From the sequence record PQ471516.1: a stretch of DNA of 64,000 nt. One strand, 5' to 3'. A program made the translations under genes and the position numbers. The notes below the pieces were generated by a model, which was given only the letters and a program-made list of their open reading frames with translations, did no database searches and was not told the DNA's origin. Shown piece after piece: positions 22,407 through 54,505 of the stretch (its first letter is position 1; each line of letters opens with the position of its first letter).

Positions 22407-22434
22407 TTGACATATCAAGCGTCCATGCTATAAT
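22407..22434 (+). promoter_or_regulatory. sigma70-type promoter
   Basis: TTGACA-N16-TATAAT with extended TG. Confidence 0.75.
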
Positions 22435-40714: not shown

Positions 40715-41342
40715 ATGTCAAGAAAATTATATGCAGATTTACAAACATCTGGTGTTATTAAATTCAGTAAATCCGTATCTGGTAATACTGATGTTAATAT
40801 CAAGACAGATTCCTTCAATATTACCGAAACTCGGATCAATTGAAGGTAACGATAGTCACTTAAGTGATTCAGTCATTACATCTTTGGGTACTGAAAATAA
40901 TAAATCATTAATCATTTCCGCATGGACTGGATTAAATGAACATGAAAACAACGTAAACATTAAAGTGAAAACTACCAACCAAACTCATGAATCTGAATGG
41001 GTTACTTTATACAATTCTTTGGGTGAAAAACTATATCAAGTTCCAAGTAATAGTAACATACTTATTGATGCATTAAAAGGTAGTAAAGTATTCAATCTTA
41101 ATTTATCAGACCGTACTACTAAACTAGAAATTAGTACTGCTCCGGCTGAAATCTATGCCATTACCATAATTCTTGAACAAGGTACTGGTTCAAATTTAGT
41201 TAACTGGAGTCCTAATGTTAAATGGTCTTATAGCCGTCCAGTAGTTCTTTCTTATGAACAAGGCGAAAAAGATATTATTGCATTAGAAACTTATGACAGT
41301 GGAGTTACATGGTACGGTGCATTAATCAGAGCAGGAGTATAA
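40715..41342 (+). CDS. tail-associated structural protein interrupted by an apparent +1 frameshift near 40826-40834
   Basis: SD AAGGA + ATG 40715 gives MSRKLYADLQTSG (like MSKKIYGGLDVTH of 30898 ORF) but stops at 40843; the +1 frame continues to NWSPNVKWSYSRP.L.....D.....T.D.G.TWYG, a motif seen in tail-fibre modules. Confidence 0.6.
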
Positions 41343-41343
41343 T

Positions 41344-44133
41344 ATGTTAAACAACAACATTGATAATATTATACAACTCATATATGGACACCATAAATTT
41401 CTTGAAAGAAACACTGGTGATACTATTGACCCTACGGTACAGCACTATGCTATCAACGATCAGGGTGTATTAGCAAACAACCGTCACTTCATTAACCACT
41501 CCGCGATGGAAGGTCAACCAAATGGTGATGGAACAACAGAAGGTCAAAGTGTTCTTATTCTTGGTTACATTTATGCTTATCTTGCAACAAACGATGATTT
41601 GTTTCTAGAAAAAGCAAAATGGTACTGGGATGCATATCATCAGTACTTCTACAATGGTAGAGAATTTCCTGATCCTCCTACGCCATTACAATGCAACTGG
41701 ATTGTGAACGCCAAAGAACCAATTCTTGCGAACTGGCCTTTAGCTGACGATGGCTGGCCTACTCATGGTGGCTTTAAAGGTATTGAGTTCCCTTTCGTTA
41801 ATGGTCTGTGTAAAGTTCCTCACGATGCACCATATTACGGTCAATTTCTTGATAAGGTAACATTTGCATTTAAAGGTGCATTAGCATGGAACCAAATCAA
41901 CGCATCAGTGAAAGCATTACTACCAGATGGTAGTACTGATTGGGATAACCCAGGTGAGCAGTATGATGTGGACTGGGTAATTGATTACTTAGGTCGTAAG
42001 ATTGACTGGGACGGTAACATTCTAGCTGAAGGTTTTGATGAATCAGAGAAAGGCACTGTACAGCTAAAAGATACAACTATTAATGGAACATATAAACTGA
42101 ACTTTGCAAACAGACAACCTGTTGAATACGGTGGTGTTTATATTGAACGTAACCAAATGCAACATAACCGCCCATTGCACGTTCCAATTAGTTTAGAATT
42201 TGCTGATAACGCGAGTGATGCTGAATTATGGTTCAGTGATGCTTCTTACTTGTTATATAAAATAACAAAAGAAAGAAAACATTATCTTGGTTGGAAATGT
42301 TCACTACTTACTTGTTATGCATACGGTGATATTGATGCAAGAGATAAATTCTTCCGTCAAAGTACTTTAGTTACTACTCCTTATACTGATGGTATTTCTT
42401 ATGAGTATTTCTATCCTAGTACTGCAATCGCTGAATTTGGTAGAAACTCACTTGGTTATATAACTATTAAGCAATTGGAAAGTGCACAAAGTACACTTGA
42501 GCAACAGGCTATCTGGTTCAGATTGAATACTTCTTCCAGCTTAGTTGTAGATTACGGTGGTGTTTGTGTTGATGGAAAACCATTATCATTTAAACCAGTA
42601 CTGGAATTATCAAAAACTAAAAATGACCACGATGTTGTACGTTACCGTTGTGGCTTACCAGAAAGTACTAATAGAGATATTAAGCATTCTGTTACTCCGC
42701 TAAGTGCATTTGTTCGTGAGAAAAAAGATGATGGTTCATCTTACATTATTGCTGATAGCAGAATCGTAGTTCCTTACGGTGATGGTACTTCTGAAATGCA
42801 ATACAGTACTGATATTCTTGTTACTCGTCGTGACACTATTAACCAATTAGTTTGTGGTGAAGATGATGGTGCAGTTATTGGTTTCTGGTTACTTGATTCC
42901 GGTAAATCTGAAGTGAAAGCTTTTACTTATCGTTCATATGAAGATGATTTTAACATCCGTATCGTTGATGATAATGGATGGCGTTGGTGGTGGATGATTC
43001 CTGCAACCCACGGTGAATGGAGTACAATAGAATTAACTGCTGATACTTTACATTTATCTGGATGGCAACCAAATCACCCTGATGATCCAGATCCTGCTGC
43101 TCCGGTATATACTGAATTAGAAGATATTACCATTCTTCCTGACACCACTCCTGTAAATGGAGTTGCAGTACTGGATTGGTATTGTTTAAACGAGCTACCA
43201 GAACTGTACAACAACGAAGATGGTGATGATTACACAATGGCATTCGCCATTACAATTGCTGGTGAGAGTGCTTATACGGCTCTTTTAGGGGATTGCGTAA
43301 TCAAAGATTATTTGCTAAACTCATTACATTATACACCAGGAACTATCCCGTTCTCTAACATTACCGACCCATATGCGAGTCAGTACTCTGGATGGCGTGG
43401 ATTACCATATCCTGGATACCAATCACCAGTGATTTATTGTTTTGAAGATGTAGCAGTTGATTATACACGTCTTGGAAATATGGTTGATTTCATGAAAGAT
43501 TCCCAAGAATGGTTTACTGCACAATTCGGTACTGTTGGTCCTTGTGCTCAAGCATATGTATGGAACCGTTGGGATAACCTGAAATATGGTGAACCAGATA
43601 CGTTTACTATGTTACACTGGGGTGATCAAGCGTGGAGTGGTTATGAGCCTCGTGCATTCTTTGGTGCATGTAGAGCATGGCAAGAACTCCATGACCGTGG
43701 TGCAGAAGTTCCTCAAACAATTATTGATTTCTGTGAGAACTGGATTCATTTCTTGATTAAGTTTCAGAAAGACAATGATGGTCGTTCTCCGACTATATTC
43801 AACAAAGATGGTACAGTTGAAGGTCCAGATTGGGACTTCACCGGACATATGTGTGGATTGTGGTTGGCTGGTGCATGTTGTGCTGGGCTGGCTGGATGTA
43901 CCATTGAGGGATTAGATGAACTCGCTGATGGTTTAGTACTGGAACTCCAGAACAACTATGTGGTAGTTTCTCCTGGCTCTGTTATGAACGGTTCATGGAG
44001 TCCGGGTGTTCGTGAAGGTACTGATAATGGTATGTTCTTCGGATTCTGGGCTGGTGAGATTATGCGTGGTTTAGGATTGTACTCACTTTACCGTCTTAAC
44101 ACACCTAACCGTTATGCTGCATTTCCTGGTTGA
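41344..44133 (+). CDS. large virion-associated protein with glycoside-hydrolase-like (alpha/alpha)6 signature
   Basis: TTEGQS.L..GY (cf. GH8 T.SEGQ.Y), DA.DA..W, Trp/Asp-rich; follows structural adaptor gene. Confidence 0.5.
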   Translation: MLNNNIDNIIQLIYGHHKFLERNTGDTIDPTVQHYAINDQGVLANNRHFINHSAMEGQPNGDGTTEGQSVLILGYIYAYLATNDDLFLEKAKWYWDAYHQYFYNGREFPDPPTPLQCNWIVNAKEPILANWPLADDGWPTHGGFKGIEFPFVNGLCKVPHDAPYYGQFLDKVTFAFKGALAWNQINASVKALLPDGSTDWDNPGEQYDVDWVIDYLGRKIDWDGNILAEGFDESEKGTVQLKDTTINGTYKLNFANRQPVEYGGVYIERNQMQHNRPLHVPISLEFADNASDAELWFSDASYLLYKITKERKHYLGWKCSLLTCYAYGDIDARDKFFRQSTLVTTPYTDGISYEYFYPSTAIAEFGRNSLGYITIKQLESAQSTLEQQAIWFRLNTSSSLVVDYGGVCVDGKPLSFKPVLELSKTKNDHDVVRYRCGLPESTNRDIKHSVTPLSAFVREKKDDGSSYIIADSRIVVPYGDGTSEMQYSTDILVTRRDTINQLVCGEDDGAVIGFWLLDSGKSEVKAFTYRSYEDDFNIRIVDDNGWRWWWMIPATHGEWSTIELTADTLHLSGWQPNHPDDPDPAAPVYTELEDITILPDTTPVNGVAVLDWYCLNELPELYNNEDGDDYTMAFAITIAGESAYTALLGDCVIKDYLLNSLHYTPGTIPFSNITDPYASQYSGWRGLPYPGYQSPVIYCFEDVAVDYTRLGNMVDFMKDSQEWFTAQFGTVGPCAQAYVWNRWDNLKYGEPDTFTMLHWGDQAWSGYEPRAFFGACRAWQELHDRGAEVPQTIIDFCENWIHFLIKFQKDNDGRSPTIFNKDGTVEGPDWDFTGHMCGLWLAGACCAGLAGCTIEGLDELADGLVLELQNNYVVVSPGSVMNGSWSPGVREGTDNGMFFGFWAGEIMRGLGLYSLYRLNTPNRYAAFPG

Positions 44134-44157
44134 CAACAAAATTTAAACTGATATAAT
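44130..44157 (+). promoter_or_regulatory. sigma70-type promoter
   Basis: TTGACA-N16-TATAAT with extended TG. Confidence 0.75.
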
Positions 44158-44187
44158 GAGAACTTCAATATGAGGTTCTCATTTTTT
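44158..44187 (+). terminator. Rho-independent terminator overlapping the promoter start site
   Basis: TGAGAAC / GTTCTCA stem plus T7. Confidence 0.7.
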
Positions 44188-44200
44188 TAAGGTGAATATA

Positions 44201-44596
44201 ATGCTAAATCAAAATATCATGAAAGCTCTGAAAATCATCCAACACGAAGTTAGTCTGGTACAGAAAAGTACTGATCGTTATTGCCTGATGGAAGATATCC
44301 AAGAGCAAATTGAACTTATTCGTAAAAATAAGGCTGTTGTTTCTCAATCTGAATCGTTAGAGGCAATTGCTGATATCATTTCATCCAAAACTGGAACAGC
44401 ACGTGAAAATATTCTCGGTGCACGCGACCTCGAACAAAGCGAGATTGAACATTTATATAAGTTCGATAACTGCGATTGGATTGAGATGATTATGGAACTA
44501 GAAGATAAGTTCGATTTAGAGATCCCTACACACTTTGAAAGCAGAGACACTACACTTGGTTCTTTAGTCAATTTTATTGATCTAAAATATAATTAA
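44201..44596 (+). CDS. acyl-carrier-protein-like protein, canonical Ser replaced by Asn
   Basis: FDNCDWIEMIMELEDKFDLEIP...TTLGSLVNFI aligns with ACP [22 protein letters not shown]...TTVQAAIDYI. Confidence 0.7.
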   Translation: MLNQNIMKALKIIQHEVSLVQKSTDRYCLMEDIQEQIELIRKNKAVVSQSESLEAIADIISSKTGTARENILGARDLEQSEIEHLYKFDNCDWIEMIMELEDKFDLEIPTHFESRDTTLGSLVNFIDLKYN

Positions 44597-44639
44597 TAAT
44601 GTACTCTAAATAATATCATCAACTATAGGAGATATTATT

Positions 44640-45014
44640 ATGAGTATGCTAGAACTATTGCTTAAACATGTAATTATACCATATTGGAAACCATTATTAG
44701 TTGTTTTAGTAATGTCTGGATGTGTGTATGGTGGTTGGGAAGCAAACAATTACTACACCGGATACAAAGAAAGCATTGATTTGAAAATTGAAAAACAAGT
44801 CAATGCTGCTTTGGATCAGATGCAACAAGAATCGGCTAAAAGTTATATTGAAACTAAGCAAATCATGCAAGATAATGCTAAGGTCATTGAAACTAAAATA
44901 CCTTACATCGTTGAACGTGAAGTTTACTACAATGTATGTTTAGACCAAGATGGTGTGAATGTTCTTAAAGAACTAAAAGAAAATTCACGTAAAGCGAGGA
45001 ATCAGTACAAATGA
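44640..45014 (+). CDS. putative inner-membrane spanin (Rz-like)
   Basis: N-terminal TM, coiled-coil, C-terminal Cys; adjacent to lipoprotein; TAAATA at 44607. Confidence 0.7.
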   Translation: MSMLELLLKHVIIPYWKPLLVVLVMSGCVYGGWEANNYYTGYKESIDLKIEKQVNAALDQMQQESAKSYIETKQIMQDNAKVIETKIPYIVEREVYYNVCLDQDGVNVLKELKENSRKARNQYK

Positions 45015-45316
45015 AATATATTCTGATTTTATCATGTGCACTATTATTTGCTGGATGTGCTCAAAAAGTACAATTACCTGCTGACCGAGTAGTAAAGCAA
45101 GAGATTCTACTTGAGCGTTGTTCGTTTGATACCCCACTCCCTGAACAAATTGTTGTTGACAAACACGGCAATTCAGGATACTCTGGTAAAGAAGTTTTGG
45201 ATGTACTACGTAAATGGGATTCAATCTACAATGATTGTGCTCTAAAGCACGATGCATTAATTGACTTGATTCGTAAACTACAAGGTGAAAACATCACGGT
45301 CATTATTAAAGAGTAA
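45011..45316 (+). CDS. putative outer-membrane spanin lipoprotein (Rz1-like)
   Basis: Lipobox LFAGC; two further Cys; overlaps Rz-like stop. Confidence 0.7.
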   Translation: MKYILILSCALLFAGCAQKVQLPADRVVKQEILLERCSFDTPLPEQIVVDKHGNSGYSGKEVLDVLRKWDSIYNDCALKHDALIDLIRKLQGENITVIIKE

Positions 45317-45326
45317 GGACATTTGA

Positions 45327-45920
45327 ATGAAGAAATATCAGGTTTACTATAAAACTAATTTAGATTTAATTCATAAACTATCTACTACTGGAGAAGGTAC
45401 TAAGCGTTATACTTTCAATAAGGTAACATTCAGATACTTCCCACAAAAAGTACTGACATTTGTTAAAAATTGCAAATGCATTGCTTGTGGTATCGAAGGA
45501 ACAGAAGTTCGTATTGAACGTTCTCACTGTAACGATCCAATTTATGGTAAACCTCATCTCAATGTCTATGCAGTGTGTGGATTGTATGAAGTACTCATGA
45601 CCGTAGATCATAACCAACTGGCTTCTAAAGGCGGTGATGATTTAGAAAGTAATTTTAATACCATGTGCATTCACTGTAATCAAATGCGTTCAAATAAAAC
45701 TGAAACAGTCCAAGAATTTCTTGAAAATGTTAAAGGTCGAAATCTATTAGATGAACACATGAAACTTTTTTTCGATAAACAGGAAAAGAAAAAGAACCCC
45801 AGTACACGAAAGCCAGAAACAATCGCTTATGAAAAATGGTGGAATGAAGATCATTTATGGCATTACCGTGATTATCTTCGTAAATTGAAAAAAGAAGAAA
45901 AAGCTTTACTAAAACAATAG
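45327..45920 (+). CDS. HNH endonuclease-like protein
   Basis: CIACG; VDH......GG.D...N....C..CN..RSN. Confidence 0.7.
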   Translation: MKKYQVYYKTNLDLIHKLSTTGEGTKRYTFNKVTFRYFPQKVLTFVKNCKCIACGIEGTEVRIERSHCNDPIYGKPHLNVYAVCGLYEVLMTVDHNQLASKGGDDLESNFNTMCIHCNQMRSNKTETVQEFLENVKGRNLLDEHMKLFFDKQEKKKNPSTRKPETIAYEKWWNEDHLWHYRDYLRKLKKEEKALLKQ

Positions 45921-45934
45921 TAGTATGTATAATG

Positions 45935-45960
45935 GGACTTGAGAAATCAAGTCCTTTTTT
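45935..45960 (+). terminator. Rho-independent terminator
   Basis: GGACTTGA-GAAA-TCAAGTCC TTTTTT. Confidence 0.85.
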
Positions 45961-45974
45961 TATAGGTAAAATAT

Positions 45975-46331
45975 ATGAAAACAAAAATCTTTCTACCACA
46001 AACCATGATGGAACTGTGTGAACATGATGCAGGAGATGTTGTCACTATTAGTGGTTCCTGGATTGAGAGTACTGAAGACTTTATGCCAGATGAGGTATAT
46101 TCTGTTGTTTTAAATGAACAGTACAATACAAGCCGTTGGAATGCACAGTACAATCTAGTTTTTCTTGACAAGAACAATGAAAAGTACTATCATTGTACGT
46201 ATGAACGAGGTCTGACAGAACGTAACTACACAACTCCTTTCTGTGATGAAATGGATGGTGTAAAGTGCTATGAAGTTTCTGTTCGTCAGGTTCCAGTTGT
46301 TACTTACAAAACCGAGTGGGATTATCTGTAA
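45975..46331 (+). CDS. hypothetical protein
   Basis: ORF after promoter TTTACT-N17-TATAAT (45905-45933). Confidence 0.65.
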   Translation: MKTKIFLPQTMMELCEHDAGDVVTISGSWIESTEDFMPDEVYSVVLNEQYNTSRWNAQYNLVFLDKNNEKYYHCTYERGLTERNYTTPFCDEMDGVKCYEVSVRQVPVVTYKTEWDYL

Positions 46332-46729: not shown

Positions 46730-46730
46730 T

Positions 46731-46760
46731 TTGGGAAATACTCCAGAAAAGTGCTATAAT
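46731..46760 (+). promoter_or_regulatory. extended -10 promoter driving the non-coding unit
   Basis: TTGGGA-N18-TATAAT with TG-C-TATAAT extended -10. Confidence 0.6.
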
Positions 46761-46765
46761 GTATA

Positions 46766-47288
46766 GTGAAAATGACAATGGGCGGTGTAAGCCGGATAAC
46801 GAGAACCTAATTCTCTTGAAAATGTAAAGGATAGATGAGCTTTACCATTGTAGCGAAGTGCAGAAGAAACCCGTTAGAGTACTAGCAGCCATTCAAACAA
46901 GGCATAAGAACTACGAATCACGGCAATGCGGCACTATAAAGAACTCCGACAGCATAACAGAGAGTTCCTAGATAGACATATAAGGATCGCACCTTACCAG
47001 ATTTGCTAAGGGAGTTTAACTCAATAAATGCGGTCGCAATTTTTCACAAGAAAGTTGCGTCCAAATTTTGAGTAAACAAGTACTACTTTGGTCGAATAGA
47101 GTTAGTACTTTGTGCTGGGGATGAAAAGACCAGTGACCGTTGCATATGACTGCGATAGAGAGAAACAGAGCAACCCGCTTTCGTTCTCTTAAATTAGACG
47201 AGAAAGATCCGTCTAAAATTTGAGAAATTCGCAATTCGACAATTCCGATGCCATCAGCGTCAAGAAGAGACTTAATTGTCTCTTTTTT
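46766..47288 (+). ncRNA. candidate large structured non-coding RNA (~520 nt), family unassigned
   Basis: No + strand ORF of 60 aa or more; promoter upstream and terminator downstream; about 12 hand-identified helices including a multi-way junction and a GUAA tetraloop. Confidence 0.6.
47265..47288 (+). terminator. Rho-independent terminator
   Basis: AAGAGAC-TTAATT-GTCTCTT TTTT. Confidence 0.8.
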
Positions 47289-47293
47289 ATTAC

Positions 47294-47429
47294 TTTCATT
47301 CCCCTGCGGGGGGATGAAATGTCCTCAACAAATCCCGTCAAGCTTTTAAAGTACAATATAAAGGAATGAATGAGTTTACGAAGTAAACGATATGAATTCT
47401 TGAGTTACGAAGGAACGAAGTGAATGAGT
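47294..47429. repeat. GC-rich hairpin followed by short direct repeats
   Basis: 11 bp stem 47294-47319; GAGT(T)TACGAAG at 47372 and 47402; GAATGAGT at 47368 and 47422. Confidence 0.5.
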
Positions 47430-54136: not shown

Positions 54137-54463
54137 ATGCTAAATTTCGTTATCCAAGGTAATGTAGATGTTACTCCAGCAATTCATGACGCAATCCGCG
54201 ATGAAGCAACAGTACTAAGTAAATTTAGTGATGCTTCAGTACTGAATCTTGGTGTTCATCTGAAGAAAGAGCATAAAACACAGTACACTGTAACACTAAC
54301 TTCTAATGGTAAGTCTGTTACTGCAAATGCAGCAGATTTATACAAAGCAATTAGTGATTCATTTGAAAAAATGGAAGTTGTACTTGGTAAAGACAAAAGC
54401 ATTAAACTGCATCGTCGTAACCACCCAACACGTCCTCTGGACTTGACAGAAGACGAAGAGTAA
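54137..54463 (+). CDS. hpf: ribosome hibernation promoting factor (HPF/RaiA)-like
   Basis: F.I.G.VDVTPAI...I.....L.KF ... A...DLY.AI...F.KME..L.K.K pattern. Confidence 0.75.
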   Translation: MLNFVIQGNVDVTPAIHDAIRDEATVLSKFSDASVLNLGVHLKKEHKTQYTVTLTSNGKSVTANAADLYKAISDSFEKMEVVLGKDKSIKLHRRNHPTRPLDLTEDEE

Positions 54464-54471
54464 TTTATAAT

Positions 54472-54505
54472 AAAGGGACAGTATATTTCTGTCCCTTTTC
54501 TTTTT
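54472..54505 (+). terminator. Rho-independent terminator
   Basis: AAAGGGACAG / CTGTCCCTTT then T-rich. Confidence 0.8.

What the first reader, a model, noticed from the sequence alone, without database searches (positions are those of the whole stretch)
44130..44596. Acyl carrier protein mimic lacking the phosphopantetheine serine
Seen: the C-terminal ~75 aa align with bacterial ACP across its helices, but the invariant D-S-L motif is D-N-C, and a ~55 aa helical extension precedes the domain. It has its own strong sigma70 promoter, suggesting early expression. Established: ACP needs Ser36 for 4'-phosphopantetheinylation and is a hub partner of SpoT, MukB, IscS and lipid A/fatty-acid enzymes through acidic helix II, which is preserved here (EMIMELEDKFDLE). 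Inference: a non-acylatable decoy that could hijack ACP partners (stringent response, chromosome organisation, lipid synthesis) or a defence system that uses ACP as cofactor.
Basis: partly seen in the sequence, partly recalled or inferred. Interest (0 to 1): 0.66.

Follow-up and report, generated by a model that had tools for sequence, protein, structure and literature searches.

The report
Phage carrier-protein look-alike without attachment serine
A giant E. coli phage encodes a small acidic protein with the fold and docking helix of the bacterial acyl carrier protein, but without the serine and greasy pocket needed to carry fatty acids, so it most likely acts by binding other proteins; which ones is unknown.

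Summary
The window is Escherichia phage Turkey5, a 351 kb jumbo phage of the 121Q/Asteriusvirus group. The gene at 44201-44596 (+) encodes a 131 aa soluble acidic protein.

- Residues 46-131 are a carrier-protein four-helix bundle. Family-only profile against PDB: all ACPs, best E 1.4e-7. AF2 pLDDT 90-96. VIA-align Z 11.2, rmsd 2.0 A.
- The D-S-L motif reads D89-N90-C91.
- Residues 4-43 form a separate helical hairpin joined by a flexible linker.
- A 12/12 sigma70 promoter sits directly upstream, overlapping the terminator of the preceding tail gene.

New here: this is a core gene of RaK2-like jumbo phages, always directly upstream of the spanin pair, and it splits into two clades. Mimasvirus and Eneladusvirus keep canonical D-S-L-D and hydrophobic residues at ACP positions 59 and 62. 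Asteriusvirus, Alcyoneusvirus and metagenomic relatives have N/R/E/W/D/T (rarely S) at position 36, an invariant Trp at 39, and mostly acidic 59/62. They keep the acidic helix II and evolve under purifying selection (dN/dS 0.16-0.28).

It is therefore a degenerate, non-acylatable carrier-fold protein acting by protein binding. A host-decoy role is plausible but untested. SpoT is an unlikely target, and AcpP abundance argues against simple competition. No complex prediction could be run.

The parts
44130..44157 (+). sigma70-type promoter, TTGACA - 16 nt - TG-TATAAT. The predicted transcription start is near 44164.
   Evidence: 12/12 match. There are 5 perfect sites in the window against 0.25 expected. 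It is conserved in 121Q and UE-S1, and in A4 with a weaker -10. The transcription start is inferred, not mapped.
44155..44190 (+). Intrinsic-terminator hairpin (13 bp stem, 3 nt loop) plus T-run. It ends transcription of the upstream tail gene, and its left arm overlaps the -10 box and the predicted transcription start.
   Evidence: The full hairpin folds at -16.1 kcal/mol (z -4.9). RNA starting at 44164 folds at only -2.5 kcal/mol (z +1.1). Promoter-initiated transcripts should therefore read through, which is an inference.
44189..44194 (+). Shine-Dalgarno sequence AAGGTG, 6 nt before the ATG.
   Evidence: Read from the sequence.
44201..44596 (+). CDS of the 131 aa ACP-like protein (P0001; GenBank XMR01742.1, 'hypothetical protein'). 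pI 4.6, net charge -11, no transmembrane segment.
   Evidence: dN/dS is 0.16-0.28 among the orthologue pairs that carry amino-acid changes.
44210..44329 (+). N-terminal helical hairpin (residues 4-18 and 23-43). The family motif S23-T-D-R-Y27 sits at the turn, and a flexible linker follows at residues 45-47.
   Evidence: AF2 with a 22-row alignment gives pLDDT 81-90 for the hairpin, below 50 for the linker, and pTM 0.61. Y27 is invariant and R26 near-invariant.
44336..44593 (+). Carrier-protein (ACP) fold domain, residues 46-131.
44465..44479 (+). Degenerate attachment motif D89-N90-C91-D92-W93, which corresponds to ACP D35-S36-L37-D38-V/T39.
44468..44512 (+). Helix II (recognition helix), residues 90-104. 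The acidic face is retained: E95, E99, E101 and D102.
44537..44548 (+). E113 to D116. E113 and D116 sit at ACP positions 59 and 62, which are hydrophobic in real ACPs and in the Ser-keeping phage clade.
   Evidence: The pocket role of positions 59 and 62 comes from my knowledge of E. coli acyl-ACP structures.
44640..45014 (+). i-spanin (Rz-like, one N-terminal transmembrane segment). It is the constant right-hand neighbour of the gene and lies in the same predicted transcription unit.
   Evidence: phrog_1152 at 1.9e-25. Synteny.
45011..45316 (+). o-spanin-like lipoprotein (lipobox LFAGC), overlapping the end of the i-spanin gene.
   Evidence: Homologues are annotated as spanins.
45327..45920 (+). 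HNH endonuclease, the last gene of the predicted unit.
   Evidence: phrog_23285 at 9.5e-89.
45934..45962 (+). Terminator-like hairpin plus T-run that closes the predicted unit.
41344..44133 (+). Upstream 929 aa tail protein. It is context only. Its stop codon lies inside the -35 box.
   Evidence: phrog_2871. The phAPEC6 orthologue gp314c is in the virion mass-spectrometry list, whereas the ACP-like gp313c is not.

Best explanation
The gene encodes a degenerate ('pseudo') acyl carrier protein that can no longer carry a phosphopantetheine or an acyl chain and works purely by protein-protein binding.

Architecture:
- A conserved N-terminal helical hairpin is joined by a flexible linker to an ACP-fold domain.
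- The acidic recognition helix II of that domain is kept under selection.
- The attachment serine and the pocket-lining residues have been replaced: N90, W93, E113 and D116.

Expression: it is transcribed by host RNA polymerase from a consensus sigma70 promoter. That promoter is built into the terminator of the preceding tail gene. The predicted transcript also carries the two spanin genes and an HNH endonuclease gene.

Proposed mechanism (inferred): helix II docks onto the basic ACP-binding patch of a target protein, most likely a host client of AcpP. The hairpin supplies extra affinity, oligomerisation or a second binding partner. The protein would then sequester or block that client instead of serving it.

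Candidate clients: PlsB, which apo-ACP is reported to inhibit, and MukB, which binds apo- and holo-AcpP alike and is already known as a phage target.

Shown: the fold, the loss of the serine and pocket residues across a whole clade, purifying selection, promoter and terminator anatomy, and gene order.
Inferred: lack of modification, the binding mode, the identity of the target, and early timing.

The confidence of 0.4 is for the full statement including a host AcpP client as target. That the protein is a non-acylatable ACP-fold protein acting by protein binding I hold at about 0.7.
For: Fold and homology.

Loss of carrier features is clade-wide and correlated:
- Position 36 is N/R/E/W/D/T, and S only in A4, UE-S1 and P0006.
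- Position 39 is W in every clade-B sequence.
- Position 59 is E/D/Y. Position 62 is D/E/N, with one I.
- The sister clade (GAP32, CBB, XbC2, Yen9-03, BF) keeps D-S-L-D, has A/I/L at 59 and F/C at 62, and carries precomputed PF00550 hits.

Helix II positions D35, D38, E41, M44, E47 and F50 stay conserved in both clades.

The gene is functional, not decaying. dN/dS is 0.16-0.28, and it is present in every genome of four genera plus metagenomic relatives.

It is the most diverged of 12 neighbouring genes between Turkey5 and 121Q: 37.7% identity against 46-88%. This pattern is typical of host-interaction genes.

Turkey5, 121Q, RaK2 and GAP32 encode no carrier-protein enzymes: no PPTase, AMP-ligase, ketosynthase, PlsC-type acyltransferase or LYR protein.

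The orthologue is not listed among the 62 virion proteins of phAPEC6.

Promoter and terminator design.

Precedents from the literature:
- Apo-ACP inhibits glycerol-3-phosphate acyltransferase more strongly than holo-ACP and stops growth (PMC3896788).
- Apo- and holo-AcpP stimulate the MukB ATPase equally, through helix II (PMC8602292).
- T7 gp5.9 inhibits MukBEF (PMC7617805).
Against:
- AcpP is at about 100 uM, with 86,000-358,000 copies per cell. A competitor needs much higher affinity or very high expression.
- Three clade-B members keep Ser36, and the sister clade keeps a canonical motif. The ancestral and perhaps shared function may therefore involve pantetheinylation.
- The constant adjacency to the spanin genes, while the left neighbour varies, hints at a role tied to lysis or to a phage partner rather than a host enzyme.
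- An 'ACP' was detected by LC-MS/MS in Eneladusvirus particle preparations (PMC7760394).
- The timing of expression is unmeasured. RNA-library contigs covering the gene cannot distinguish RNA from contaminating phage DNA.
Confidence: 0.4

Rival explanations
1. The protein is a subunit or adaptor of a phage-encoded complex, not a host decoy. The ACP fold would act as a structural docking module, as mitochondrial ACP does in complex I and with LYR proteins. The hairpin and helix II would bind phage proteins.
For: - It is a core gene conserved across four genera of RaK2-like phages with the same N-terminal motif.
- An 'ACP' was found by LC-MS/MS in Eneladusvirus particle preparations.
- The two-module architecture with a flexible linker suits a bridging role.
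- Structural ACP subunits of respiratory complexes are among the fold matches.
Against: - It is not listed among phAPEC6 virion proteins.
- No LYR-type partner is found in four of the genomes.
- Its divergence is high relative to its neighbours, which is unusual for a structural subunit.
- A host-type early promoter precedes it in Asteriusvirus.
Confidence: 0.22
2. The protein is an accessory of the lysis module. It would be a cytoplasmic factor made together with the i-spanin and o-spanin that regulates their production, their membrane insertion or the timing of lysis.
For: - The spanin pair is the constant right-hand neighbour in every genome examined. The left neighbour varies: tail protein, RlaP nucleotidyltransferase, a 287 aa ORF, or a 187-191 aa ORF.
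- No terminator lies between the gene and the spanin genes.
- The adjacency has been noted in print (PMC7760394).
Against: - The whole region is collinear in these phages, so adjacency may simply be inherited.
- No known spanin function needs a cytoplasmic partner, and lipoprotein acylation uses phospholipids rather than acyl-ACP (my own knowledge).
- The protein has no membrane segment.
- The endolysins are encoded elsewhere in the genome (phAPEC6 Gp241 and Gp293).
Confidence: 0.12
3. The protein is an acidic nucleic-acid mimic or other anti-defence protein that merely reuses the ACP scaffold, in the manner of Ocr, ArdA or AcrIIC5.
For: - Net charge is -11, concentrated in the C-terminal domain.
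- It evolves fast and has an early-type promoter.
- The N-terminal profile gives a weak hit to AcrIIC5 (E 0.003, 36 residues).
Against: - AcrIIC5 has an unrelated alpha/beta fold (PMC9976890), so that hit is probably chance.
- The charge is no higher than in ordinary ACPs.
- There is no PADLOC hit or other link to a defence system.
Confidence: 0.08
4. It is still a working carrier protein, modified at a non-canonical residue or by an unusual enzyme.
For: - The sister clade and three clade-B members keep Ser36.
- An ACP with a variant attachment site exists among the fold matches (2AFE).
- Cys91 lies next to the lost serine in Turkey5.
Against: - Position 36 takes seven different residues, and Cys91 is L or W in the orthologues.
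- Positions 59 and 62 are mostly acidic.
- The phage genomes contain no PPTase and no loading or condensing enzymes.
- S36T ACP is a standard non-modifiable mutant (my own knowledge).
Confidence: 0.04
5. It is a decaying relic of an ACP gene with no remaining function.
For: The defining serine has been lost and scores fall below family thresholds.
Against: - dN/dS is 0.16-0.28 and the frame is intact in all but one genome.
- W39, Y27, D35 and D38 are invariant.
- AF2 models it with high confidence.
- The promoter and Shine-Dalgarno sequence are conserved.
Confidence: 0.03

Closest known systems
Bacterial acyl carrier protein AcpP (PF00550, TIGR00517)
   Same: It shares the four-helix carrier fold (Z up to 11.2, rmsd about 2 A). 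Helix II is conserved, with D35, D38, E41, M44, E47 and F50 equivalents. It is also small and acidic.
   Different: - It has no Ser36 (N90), Trp at position 39, and acidic residues at positions 59 and 62.
- It has a 5-residue longer loop I and a 45 aa N-terminal helical hairpin.
- Its scores are below all curated thresholds.
N-terminally extended 'acyl carrier proteins' of Mimasvirus and Eneladusvirus jumbo phages (GAP32_159, CBB gp163, Serratia phage BF gp158, Yersinia phage fHe-Yen9-03 g156)
   Same: These are orthologues. They share the length, the hairpin with the (S/T)xxRY motif, and the position directly upstream of the i-spanin and o-spanin genes.
   Different: They keep canonical D-S-L-D, hydrophobic residues at positions 59 and 62, no Trp39, and pass Pfam PP-binding. 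They could therefore still be pantetheinylated. In those phages the gene overlaps an upstream ORF rather than having its own promoter.
Non-modifiable apo-ACP (apo-AcpP, S36 mutants) as an inhibitor in E. coli
   Same: Both are ACP folds without the prosthetic group. Apo-ACP is reported to inhibit glycerol-3-phosphate acyltransferase and arrest growth (PMC3896788). This gives a precedent for how a Ser-less ACP could act.
   Different: That is a laboratory or overexpression phenomenon of the host's own protein. Here the state is genetically fixed, the pocket has been remodelled and an extra domain is attached. No inhibition has been shown.
Free-standing phage ACPs (PHROG 5934 and 4154; e.g. Achromobacter phage Motura, ICP1, phiCbK, ViI)
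   Same: They are phage-encoded and share the carrier fold.
   Different: They are about 80 aa, have a canonical D-S-L-D motif and lack the hairpin. They are regarded as auxiliary metabolic genes.
Mitochondrial ACP as a structural subunit (complex I SDAP/ACPM, ISD11-NFS1)
   Same: In both cases an ACP fold serves as a protein-binding module. Some of these carry N-terminal extensions (7tgh_AC aligned over model residues 12-131).
   Different: Those proteins keep Ser36 and an acyl-pantetheine that inserts into the LYR partner. No LYR protein is found in these phages.

Membership tests
Acyl carrier protein (PF00550 PP-binding / TIGR00517) | Four-helix carrier-protein fold | tested here: met
   AF2 pLDDT is 90-96 over residues 51-130. 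Foldseek and VIA-align top hits are all carrier proteins, with best Z 11.2 and rmsd 2.0 A over 81 residues.
Acyl carrier protein (PF00550 PP-binding / TIGR00517) | Score above the curated family threshold | tested here: not met
   Pfam gives 15.3 bits against a 20.8 cutoff. TIGR00517 gives 29.9 against 70.45, and the best NCBIfam model gives 31.7 against 66. Clade-B proteins have no precomputed Pfam hit.
Acyl carrier protein (PF00550 PP-binding / TIGR00517) | Conserved Ser of the D-S-L motif at the N-terminus of helix II (the pantetheine attachment site) | tested here: not met
   The motif is D89-N90-C91. Across the clade, position 36 is N/R/E/W/D/T/S.
Acyl carrier protein (PF00550 PP-binding / TIGR00517) | Hydrophobic acyl-chain pocket between helices II, III and IV (positions 59 and 62) | tested here: not met
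   By sequence only, E113 and D116 replace A59 and I62, and W93 replaces V/T39. The geometry of the pocket in the model could not be inspected.
Acyl carrier protein (PF00550 PP-binding / TIGR00517) | Acidic recognition helix II | tested here: met
   D89, D92, E95, E99, E101, D102 and the F104 core residue are present. Residues 89-107 hold 8 acidic and 1 basic residue.
Acyl carrier protein (PF00550 PP-binding / TIGR00517) | Actual 4'-phosphopantetheinylation and acyl transfer | not testable with these tools
   This needs intact-mass MS or an AcpS/Sfp assay.
Acyl carrier protein (PF00550 PP-binding / TIGR00517) | Cognate enzymes encoded nearby (PPTase, ligase, synthase or acyltransferase) | tested here: not met
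   PF01648, PF00501, PF00109 and PF01553 gave no hit in Turkey5, 121Q, RaK2 or GAP32. Control genomes were positive. The host's own enzymes remain available.
N-extended ACP-like family of RaK2-like jumbo phages (phrog_18343) | Full-length match to the family profile | tested here: met
   phrog_18343 scores 9.5e-20 over residues 2-126. Orthologues at 34-40% identity are found in 38 other phage records.
N-extended ACP-like family of RaK2-like jumbo phages (phrog_18343) | N-terminal helical hairpin with the (S/T)-x-x-R/Q-Y motif | tested here: met
   The motif is S23-T-D-R-Y27, and Y27 is invariant. The hairpin has pLDDT 81-90.
N-extended ACP-like family of RaK2-like jumbo phages (phrog_18343) | Position directly upstream of the i-spanin/o-spanin pair | tested here: met
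DNA-mimic anti-defence proteins (AcrIIC5, Ocr, ArdA) | Shared fold or significant sequence similarity | tested here: not met
   The only signal is a 36-residue N-terminal hit to AcrIIC5 at E 0.003. AcrIIC5 has an alpha/beta fold with a four-stranded sheet, whereas this protein is all-helical.
Holin/antiholin lysis regulators | Transmembrane segment(s) | tested here: not met
   The maximum Kyte-Doolittle hydropathy over a 19-residue window is 0.48.

The most novel reading that the evidence does not exclude
This would be the first viral mimic of the bacterial hub protein AcpP. A permanently 'apo', pocket-less ACP domain is tethered to a helical hairpin. It would out-compete AcpP on a pantetheine-independent client, such as the MukB joint or PlsB. 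That would switch off chromosome organisation or phospholipid synthesis early in jumbo-phage infection. The Ser-keeping sister clade would represent the ancestral, still-loadable state.
Probability: 0.25. Interest if true: 0.8.

Novelty: new variant of a known kind. Interest (0 to 1): 0.55.

Why it matters
ACP is one of the most connected proteins in bacteria, and no virus is known to mimic it. This family offers a natural before-and-after pair for study. One clade keeps a canonical carrier motif. The other has lost the serine and pocket residues but keeps the docking helix under selection.

If the Ser-less form binds a host client, it would reveal a new route of host takeover. It would also provide a ready-made, non-acylatable probe for pantetheine-independent ACP interactions such as those with MukB and PlsB.

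If it instead binds phage proteins or acts with the spanins, it would be a new example of a carrier fold recruited as a structural module outside mitochondria.

A practical point also follows. Several GenBank records name these proteins 'acyl carrier protein', 'acpP' or 'D-alanyl carrier protein', which is misleading for the Asteriusvirus and Alcyoneusvirus members.

Tried and rejected
- **Complex prediction.** No docking evidence of any kind exists.
- **AcrIIC5.** The N-terminal profile hit it at E 0.003. I rejected this as chance because the published fold is alpha/beta.
- **SpoT as target.** Disfavoured, because SpoT is reported not to bind apo-ACP.
- **AcpS as target.** Considered and set aside. 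Blocking new holo-ACP formation should matter little during a short infection, given the large existing holo-ACP pool. This is reasoning only.
- **Defence-system link.** There is no PADLOC hit.
- **Phage-encoded carrier-protein partners.** Searches for PPTase, AMP-binding, PlsC acyltransferase, ketosynthase and LYR families found none in four genomes.
- **The ORF overlapping the gene start in RaK2, GAP32 and Yen9-03.** It has no Pfam family and no homologue in Turkey5 or 121Q, so it cannot be an obligate partner.
- **RNA evidence.** Contigs from three RNA-type libraries match parts of the gene and the spanin genes at 100% identity (44132-44321, 44363-44542, 44738-45123). One contig starts upstream of the predicted transcription start, and phage DNA can contaminate such libraries, so this proves neither transcription nor a start site.
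- **Sequence searches.** The word search with the single protein found only near-identical copies. The exhaustive phmmer search found 11 proteins, so the family is small.
- **ESM Atlas.** It gave only a 0.90 feature hit to a cluster with weak PP-binding content, which adds nothing.
- **BFVD hit A0A2Z5HFQ2** (432 aa, 33% identity). It could be a fusion or a mis-annotation. I did not resolve it.
- **Rfam and tRNA scans** of the surrounding region were empty.

Full report
**Where the window comes from.** Bases 43000-46000 are 100% identical to Escherichia phage Turkey5 (PQ471516.1, 351,311 bp) and 97.6% identical to vB_EcoM_JNE01. Both are jumbo myoviruses of the 121Q/PBECO4 group, genus Asteriusvirus. 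Window position 44201 equals record position 106201. Near-identical DNA occurs in chicken-gut, wastewater, faecal and food metagenomes from 12 studies.

**The gene.**
- The ORF starts at ATG 44201, with AAGGTG six bases upstream, and ends at 44596. This is the deposited CDS XMR01742.1, 'hypothetical protein'.
- The GTG at 44192 that a mechanical ORF list offers lies inside the Shine-Dalgarno sequence.
- The product (P0001) is 131 aa, pI 4.6, net charge -11. Residues 46-131 hold 19 acidic residues, and there is no hydrophobic segment.
- It is a real, selected gene. Nei-Gojobori dN/dS is 0.16-0.28 among orthologue pairs that carry amino-acid changes. The JNE01 copy differs from Turkey5 by one synonymous change.

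**Is it ACP-like?** Yes.
- Single-sequence scans are sub-threshold but consistent. Pfam PP-binding gives 15.3 bits against a 20.8 cutoff. NCBIfam ACP models reach 1.4e-7 but lie far below their cutoffs. phrog_5934 'acyl carrier protein' scores 3.3e-9. The best match is the uncharacterised phrog_18343 at 9.5e-20 over the full length.
- A profile built only from members of the phage family, with no genuine ACP included, retrieves only ACPs from the PDB. The best hit is E 1.4e-7, and all 60 hits shown are ACPs.
- AlphaFold2 gives helices at 51-64, 68-72, 79-86, 90-104, 110-113 and 119-130, with pLDDT 90-96.
- Foldseek against the PDB lists only ACPs, with TM 0.67-0.78 normalised to the target and rmsd 2-3.5 A. 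Its E-values are only about 7e-3.
- The Foldseek-independent VIA-align search of 48,161 chains puts carrier proteins in all top 50 places. The best match has Z 11.2, rmsd 2.0 A and 81 of 81 residues aligned on model residues 46-131.

**The attachment motif.** The HMMER alignment to B. subtilis ACP fixes the numbering: D89-N90-C91-D92-W93 corresponds to D35-S36-L37-D38-V39. Helix II continues I-E-M-I-M-E-L-E-D-K-F, so E41, M44, E47, D/E48 and F50 are all kept.

**The N-terminal extension.**
- With an 8-row alignment the first 45 residues were modelled as two helices at pLDDT 56-68.
- With 22 rows they become a confident hairpin, with helices at 4-18 and 23-43 and pLDDT 81-90. The linker at 45-47 stays below 50 and pTM is only 0.61.
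- I read this as two well-defined modules whose mutual orientation is undefined.
- The turn carries the family's only strongly conserved N-terminal motif, (S/T)-x-(D/E/N)-(R/Q)-Y. Y27 is invariant.
- A profile of this part alone finds nothing convincing in the PDB. The best hit is AcrIIC5 at E 0.003 over 36 residues. AcrIIC5 has an unrelated alpha/beta fold (PMC9976890), so I treat this as chance.

**Family and evolution: the main new result.**
- tblastn finds full-length orthologues in all Asteriusvirus genomes. It also finds them in Alcyoneusvirus (RaK2 ORF009, K64-1, Muenster), Mimasvirus (GAP32_159, CBB gp163, XbC2_157) and Eneladusvirus (Yersinia fHe-Yen9-03/04, Serratia BF, Erwinia pEa_SNUABM phages).
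- The exhaustive phmmer search of 1.8 billion representatives found only 11 proteins at E <= 1e-3. A profile word search found 53 at E <= 1e-5, about half of them ordinary short ACPs. The family is small and confined to this phage group.
- Tabulating ACP positions 35-72 separates two clades:

| Feature | Clade A (Mimasvirus, Eneladusvirus, metagenomic P0014/16/34/35) | Clade B (Asteriusvirus, Alcyoneusvirus, metagenomic P0002/3/5/6) |
|---|---|---|
| Attachment motif | canonical D-S-L-D | D-x-[L/C/W]-D-W |
| Position 36 | S | N (Turkey5, JNE01), R, E, W (121Q, PBECO4, TH47, EcMJ, Ecwhy_1), D, T (RaK2 and all 17 RaK2-like clusters); S only in A4, UE-S1 and P0006 |
| Position 39 | L/Y/M/E/K | W without exception |
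| Position 59 | A/I/L | E, D or Y |
| Position 62 | F/C | D, E or N (I once) |
| Precomputed Pfam PF00550 hit | yes | no |

- Positions 39, 59 and 62 line the acyl-chain cavity in E. coli acyl-ACP structures. This is my own knowledge, not tested here. Relaxation of Ser36, fixation of Trp39 and acidic replacements at positions 59 and 62 therefore look like one event: loss of the carrier function.
- The docking face of helix II (D35, D38, E41, E47) remained under constraint.
- Thr and the other residues at position 36 cannot be pantetheinylated by AcpS-type enzymes (my own knowledge).

**No carrier-protein enzymology in the phage.** Six-frame HMM searches of the complete Turkey5, 121Q, RaK2 and GAP32 genomes were run with positive controls in reference bacteria. 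They found no PPTase (PF01648), AMP-dependent ligase (PF00501), ketosynthase (PF00109), PlsC-type acyltransferase (PF01553) or LYR protein (PF05347). The gene is the only PP-binding-like ORF in Turkey5.

**Genomic context.**
- Downstream, in every genome and in two metagenomic contigs, lie an Rz-like i-spanin (window 44640-45014, phrog_1152 at 1.9e-25) and an overlapping lipoprotein with a lipobox (45011-45316). Homologues of the latter are annotated as o-spanin.
- In clade B an HNH endonuclease follows (45327-45920), and then a terminator at 45934-45955.
- The left neighbour varies. It is a 929 aa tail protein in Turkey5, 121Q, A4 and PBECO4. It is the RlaP nucleotidyltransferase in UE-S1, vB_Ec-M-J, Ecwhy_1 and contig L025. 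It is a 287 aa ORF in contig L026, and a 187-191 aa ORF without a Pfam family in RaK2, GAP32, CBB, BF and Yen9-03.
- The Eneladusvirus genome paper already remarked that the 'ACP' lies next to the spanin-like gene. It also reported the protein among 89 proteins seen by LC-MS/MS (PMC7760394).
- In phAPEC6 the upstream tail fibre gp314c is in the virion proteome table, but the ACP-like gp313c is not.

**Promoter.**
- TTGACA-16 nt-(TG)TATAAT at 44130-44157 matches 12 of 12 positions.
- The window has five such perfect sites, all on the + strand, against 0.25 expected from shuffles.
- The element is conserved in 121Q and UE-S1, and in A4 with a weaker -10. It is absent where the gene abuts its upstream neighbour.
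- It overlaps a 13-bp-stem terminator hairpin at 44155-44183, followed by T7. RNA arriving from the tail gene folds this at -16.1 kcal/mol (z -4.9). RNA initiated about 7 nt after the -10 box lacks most of the left arm and folds at only -2.5 kcal/mol (z +1.1).
- The inferred design is an insulator. Late tail transcripts stop there, while host-polymerase transcripts start there and read into the ACP-like, spanin and HNH genes.
- A second copy of this design lies at 54443-54498.
- 'Early expression' is an inference from the promoter type. Contigs from RNA-type libraries cover parts of the gene but cannot prove transcription.

**Rate of change.** Between Turkey5 and 121Q the protein is 37.7% identical. 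This is the lowest of 12 neighbouring genes, which range from 46% to 88%. Selection nevertheless remains purifying. This combination is common in genes that face the host.

**Mechanism.**
- What is shown: a soluble, acidic, two-module protein whose ACP domain has lost the features needed to carry an acyl-pantetheine but kept the helix that all ACP partners recognise.
- My best reading (confidence about 0.4) is that it binds, through helix II, a protein that normally binds AcpP, with the hairpin adding affinity, valency or a second partner.
- The literature gives two pantetheine-independent precedents. Apo-ACP inhibits glycerol-3-phosphate acyltransferase more strongly than holo-ACP and arrests growth (PMC3896788). 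MukB's ATPase depends on AcpP bound at its joint through helix II and is stimulated equally by apo- and holo-AcpP (PMC8602292).
- MukBEF is already a known phage target, inhibited by T7 gp5.9 (PMC7617805).
- The main difficulty is stoichiometry, since AcpP is present at about 100 uM.
- Rivals are a phage-internal adaptor, a lysis-module accessory, an acidic anti-defence protein, a still-active carrier and a relic. They are weighed in the report sections.
No interaction has been tested.

**Comparison with what is known.**
- The protein is a homologue of ACP but fails the membership tests for a functional ACP: threshold scores, Ser36 and pocket residues.
- It is a clear member of the N-extended phage family phrog_18343.
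- Several records annotate orthologues as 'acyl carrier protein', 'acpP', 'carrier domain-containing protein' or 'D-alanyl carrier protein 1'.
- In the searchable literature I found only the Eneladusvirus remark. I found nothing on the loss of the serine or on function. The library is incomplete, so absence there is not proof.
- I rate it a new variant of a known kind.

**Verdict.** Interest is 0.55. The clade-wide, correlated loss of carrier features with retention of the docking helix is a clean and testable finding. Function is still inferred, and homologues are already annotated as ACPs.

Noticed in passing
window 54443-54498 (+); also 22407-22434 (+): A second perfect sigma70 promoter (54443-54471) is fused to a terminator hairpin (54472-54498), the same design as at 44130-44190. 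A third perfect promoter (22407-22434) has its -10 box inside the palindrome GCGTCCAT..ATGGACGC, with no T-run after it. All five perfect promoters in the window are on the + strand.
   Followed up: partly
window 40884-44133; loci L004, L005, L015, L025: The 152 aa tail-fibre gene and the 929 aa tail-protein gene lie between the RlaP nucleotidyltransferase and the ACP-like gene in Turkey5, 121Q, A4 and PBECO4. They are absent from that position in UE-S1, vB_Ec-M-J, Ecwhy_1 and one metagenomic contig. This looks like a movable receptor-binding module.
   Followed up: no
window 45327-45920: An HNH endonuclease follows the spanin pair in Asteriusvirus, Alcyoneusvirus and the two metagenomic relatives. 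It does not in GAP32, CBB or Serratia phage BF. Yersinia fHe-Yen9-03 has an unclassified 177 aa ORF at that place.
   Followed up: no
window 46730-47423: This is about 0.7 kb with no convincing ORF. Metagenomic contigs show insertions, deletions and skipped stretches here. There is no tRNA and no Rfam match.
   Followed up: partly
L016 (Salmonella phage SD-1_S14) 201-650: This phage's copy of the ACP-like gene has an unrelated C-terminus after '...KFNVE' (149 aa), and the record annotates only small ORFs there. It is either a frameshift or a sequencing error.
   Followed up: no
L020 (Cronobacter phage GAP32) 2438-2887: GAP32_159 is annotated from an internal start (84 aa). The open frame extends upstream and includes the conserved N-terminal hairpin, as in CBB gp163.
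   Followed up: partly
L012 4015-4578; L020 1924-2499; L022 954-1523: In RaK2, GAP32, CBB, BF and Yen9-03 a 187-191 aa ORF overlaps the start of the ACP-like gene. It has no Pfam family, and the RaK2 copy contains a 'GFHIDC' motif. No homologue was found in Turkey5 or 121Q.
   Followed up: partly
BFVD entry A0A2Z5HFQ2: A 432 aa viral protein aligns to the whole model at 33% identity. It could be a fusion of the ACP-like protein with another domain, or a mis-called gene.
   Followed up: no
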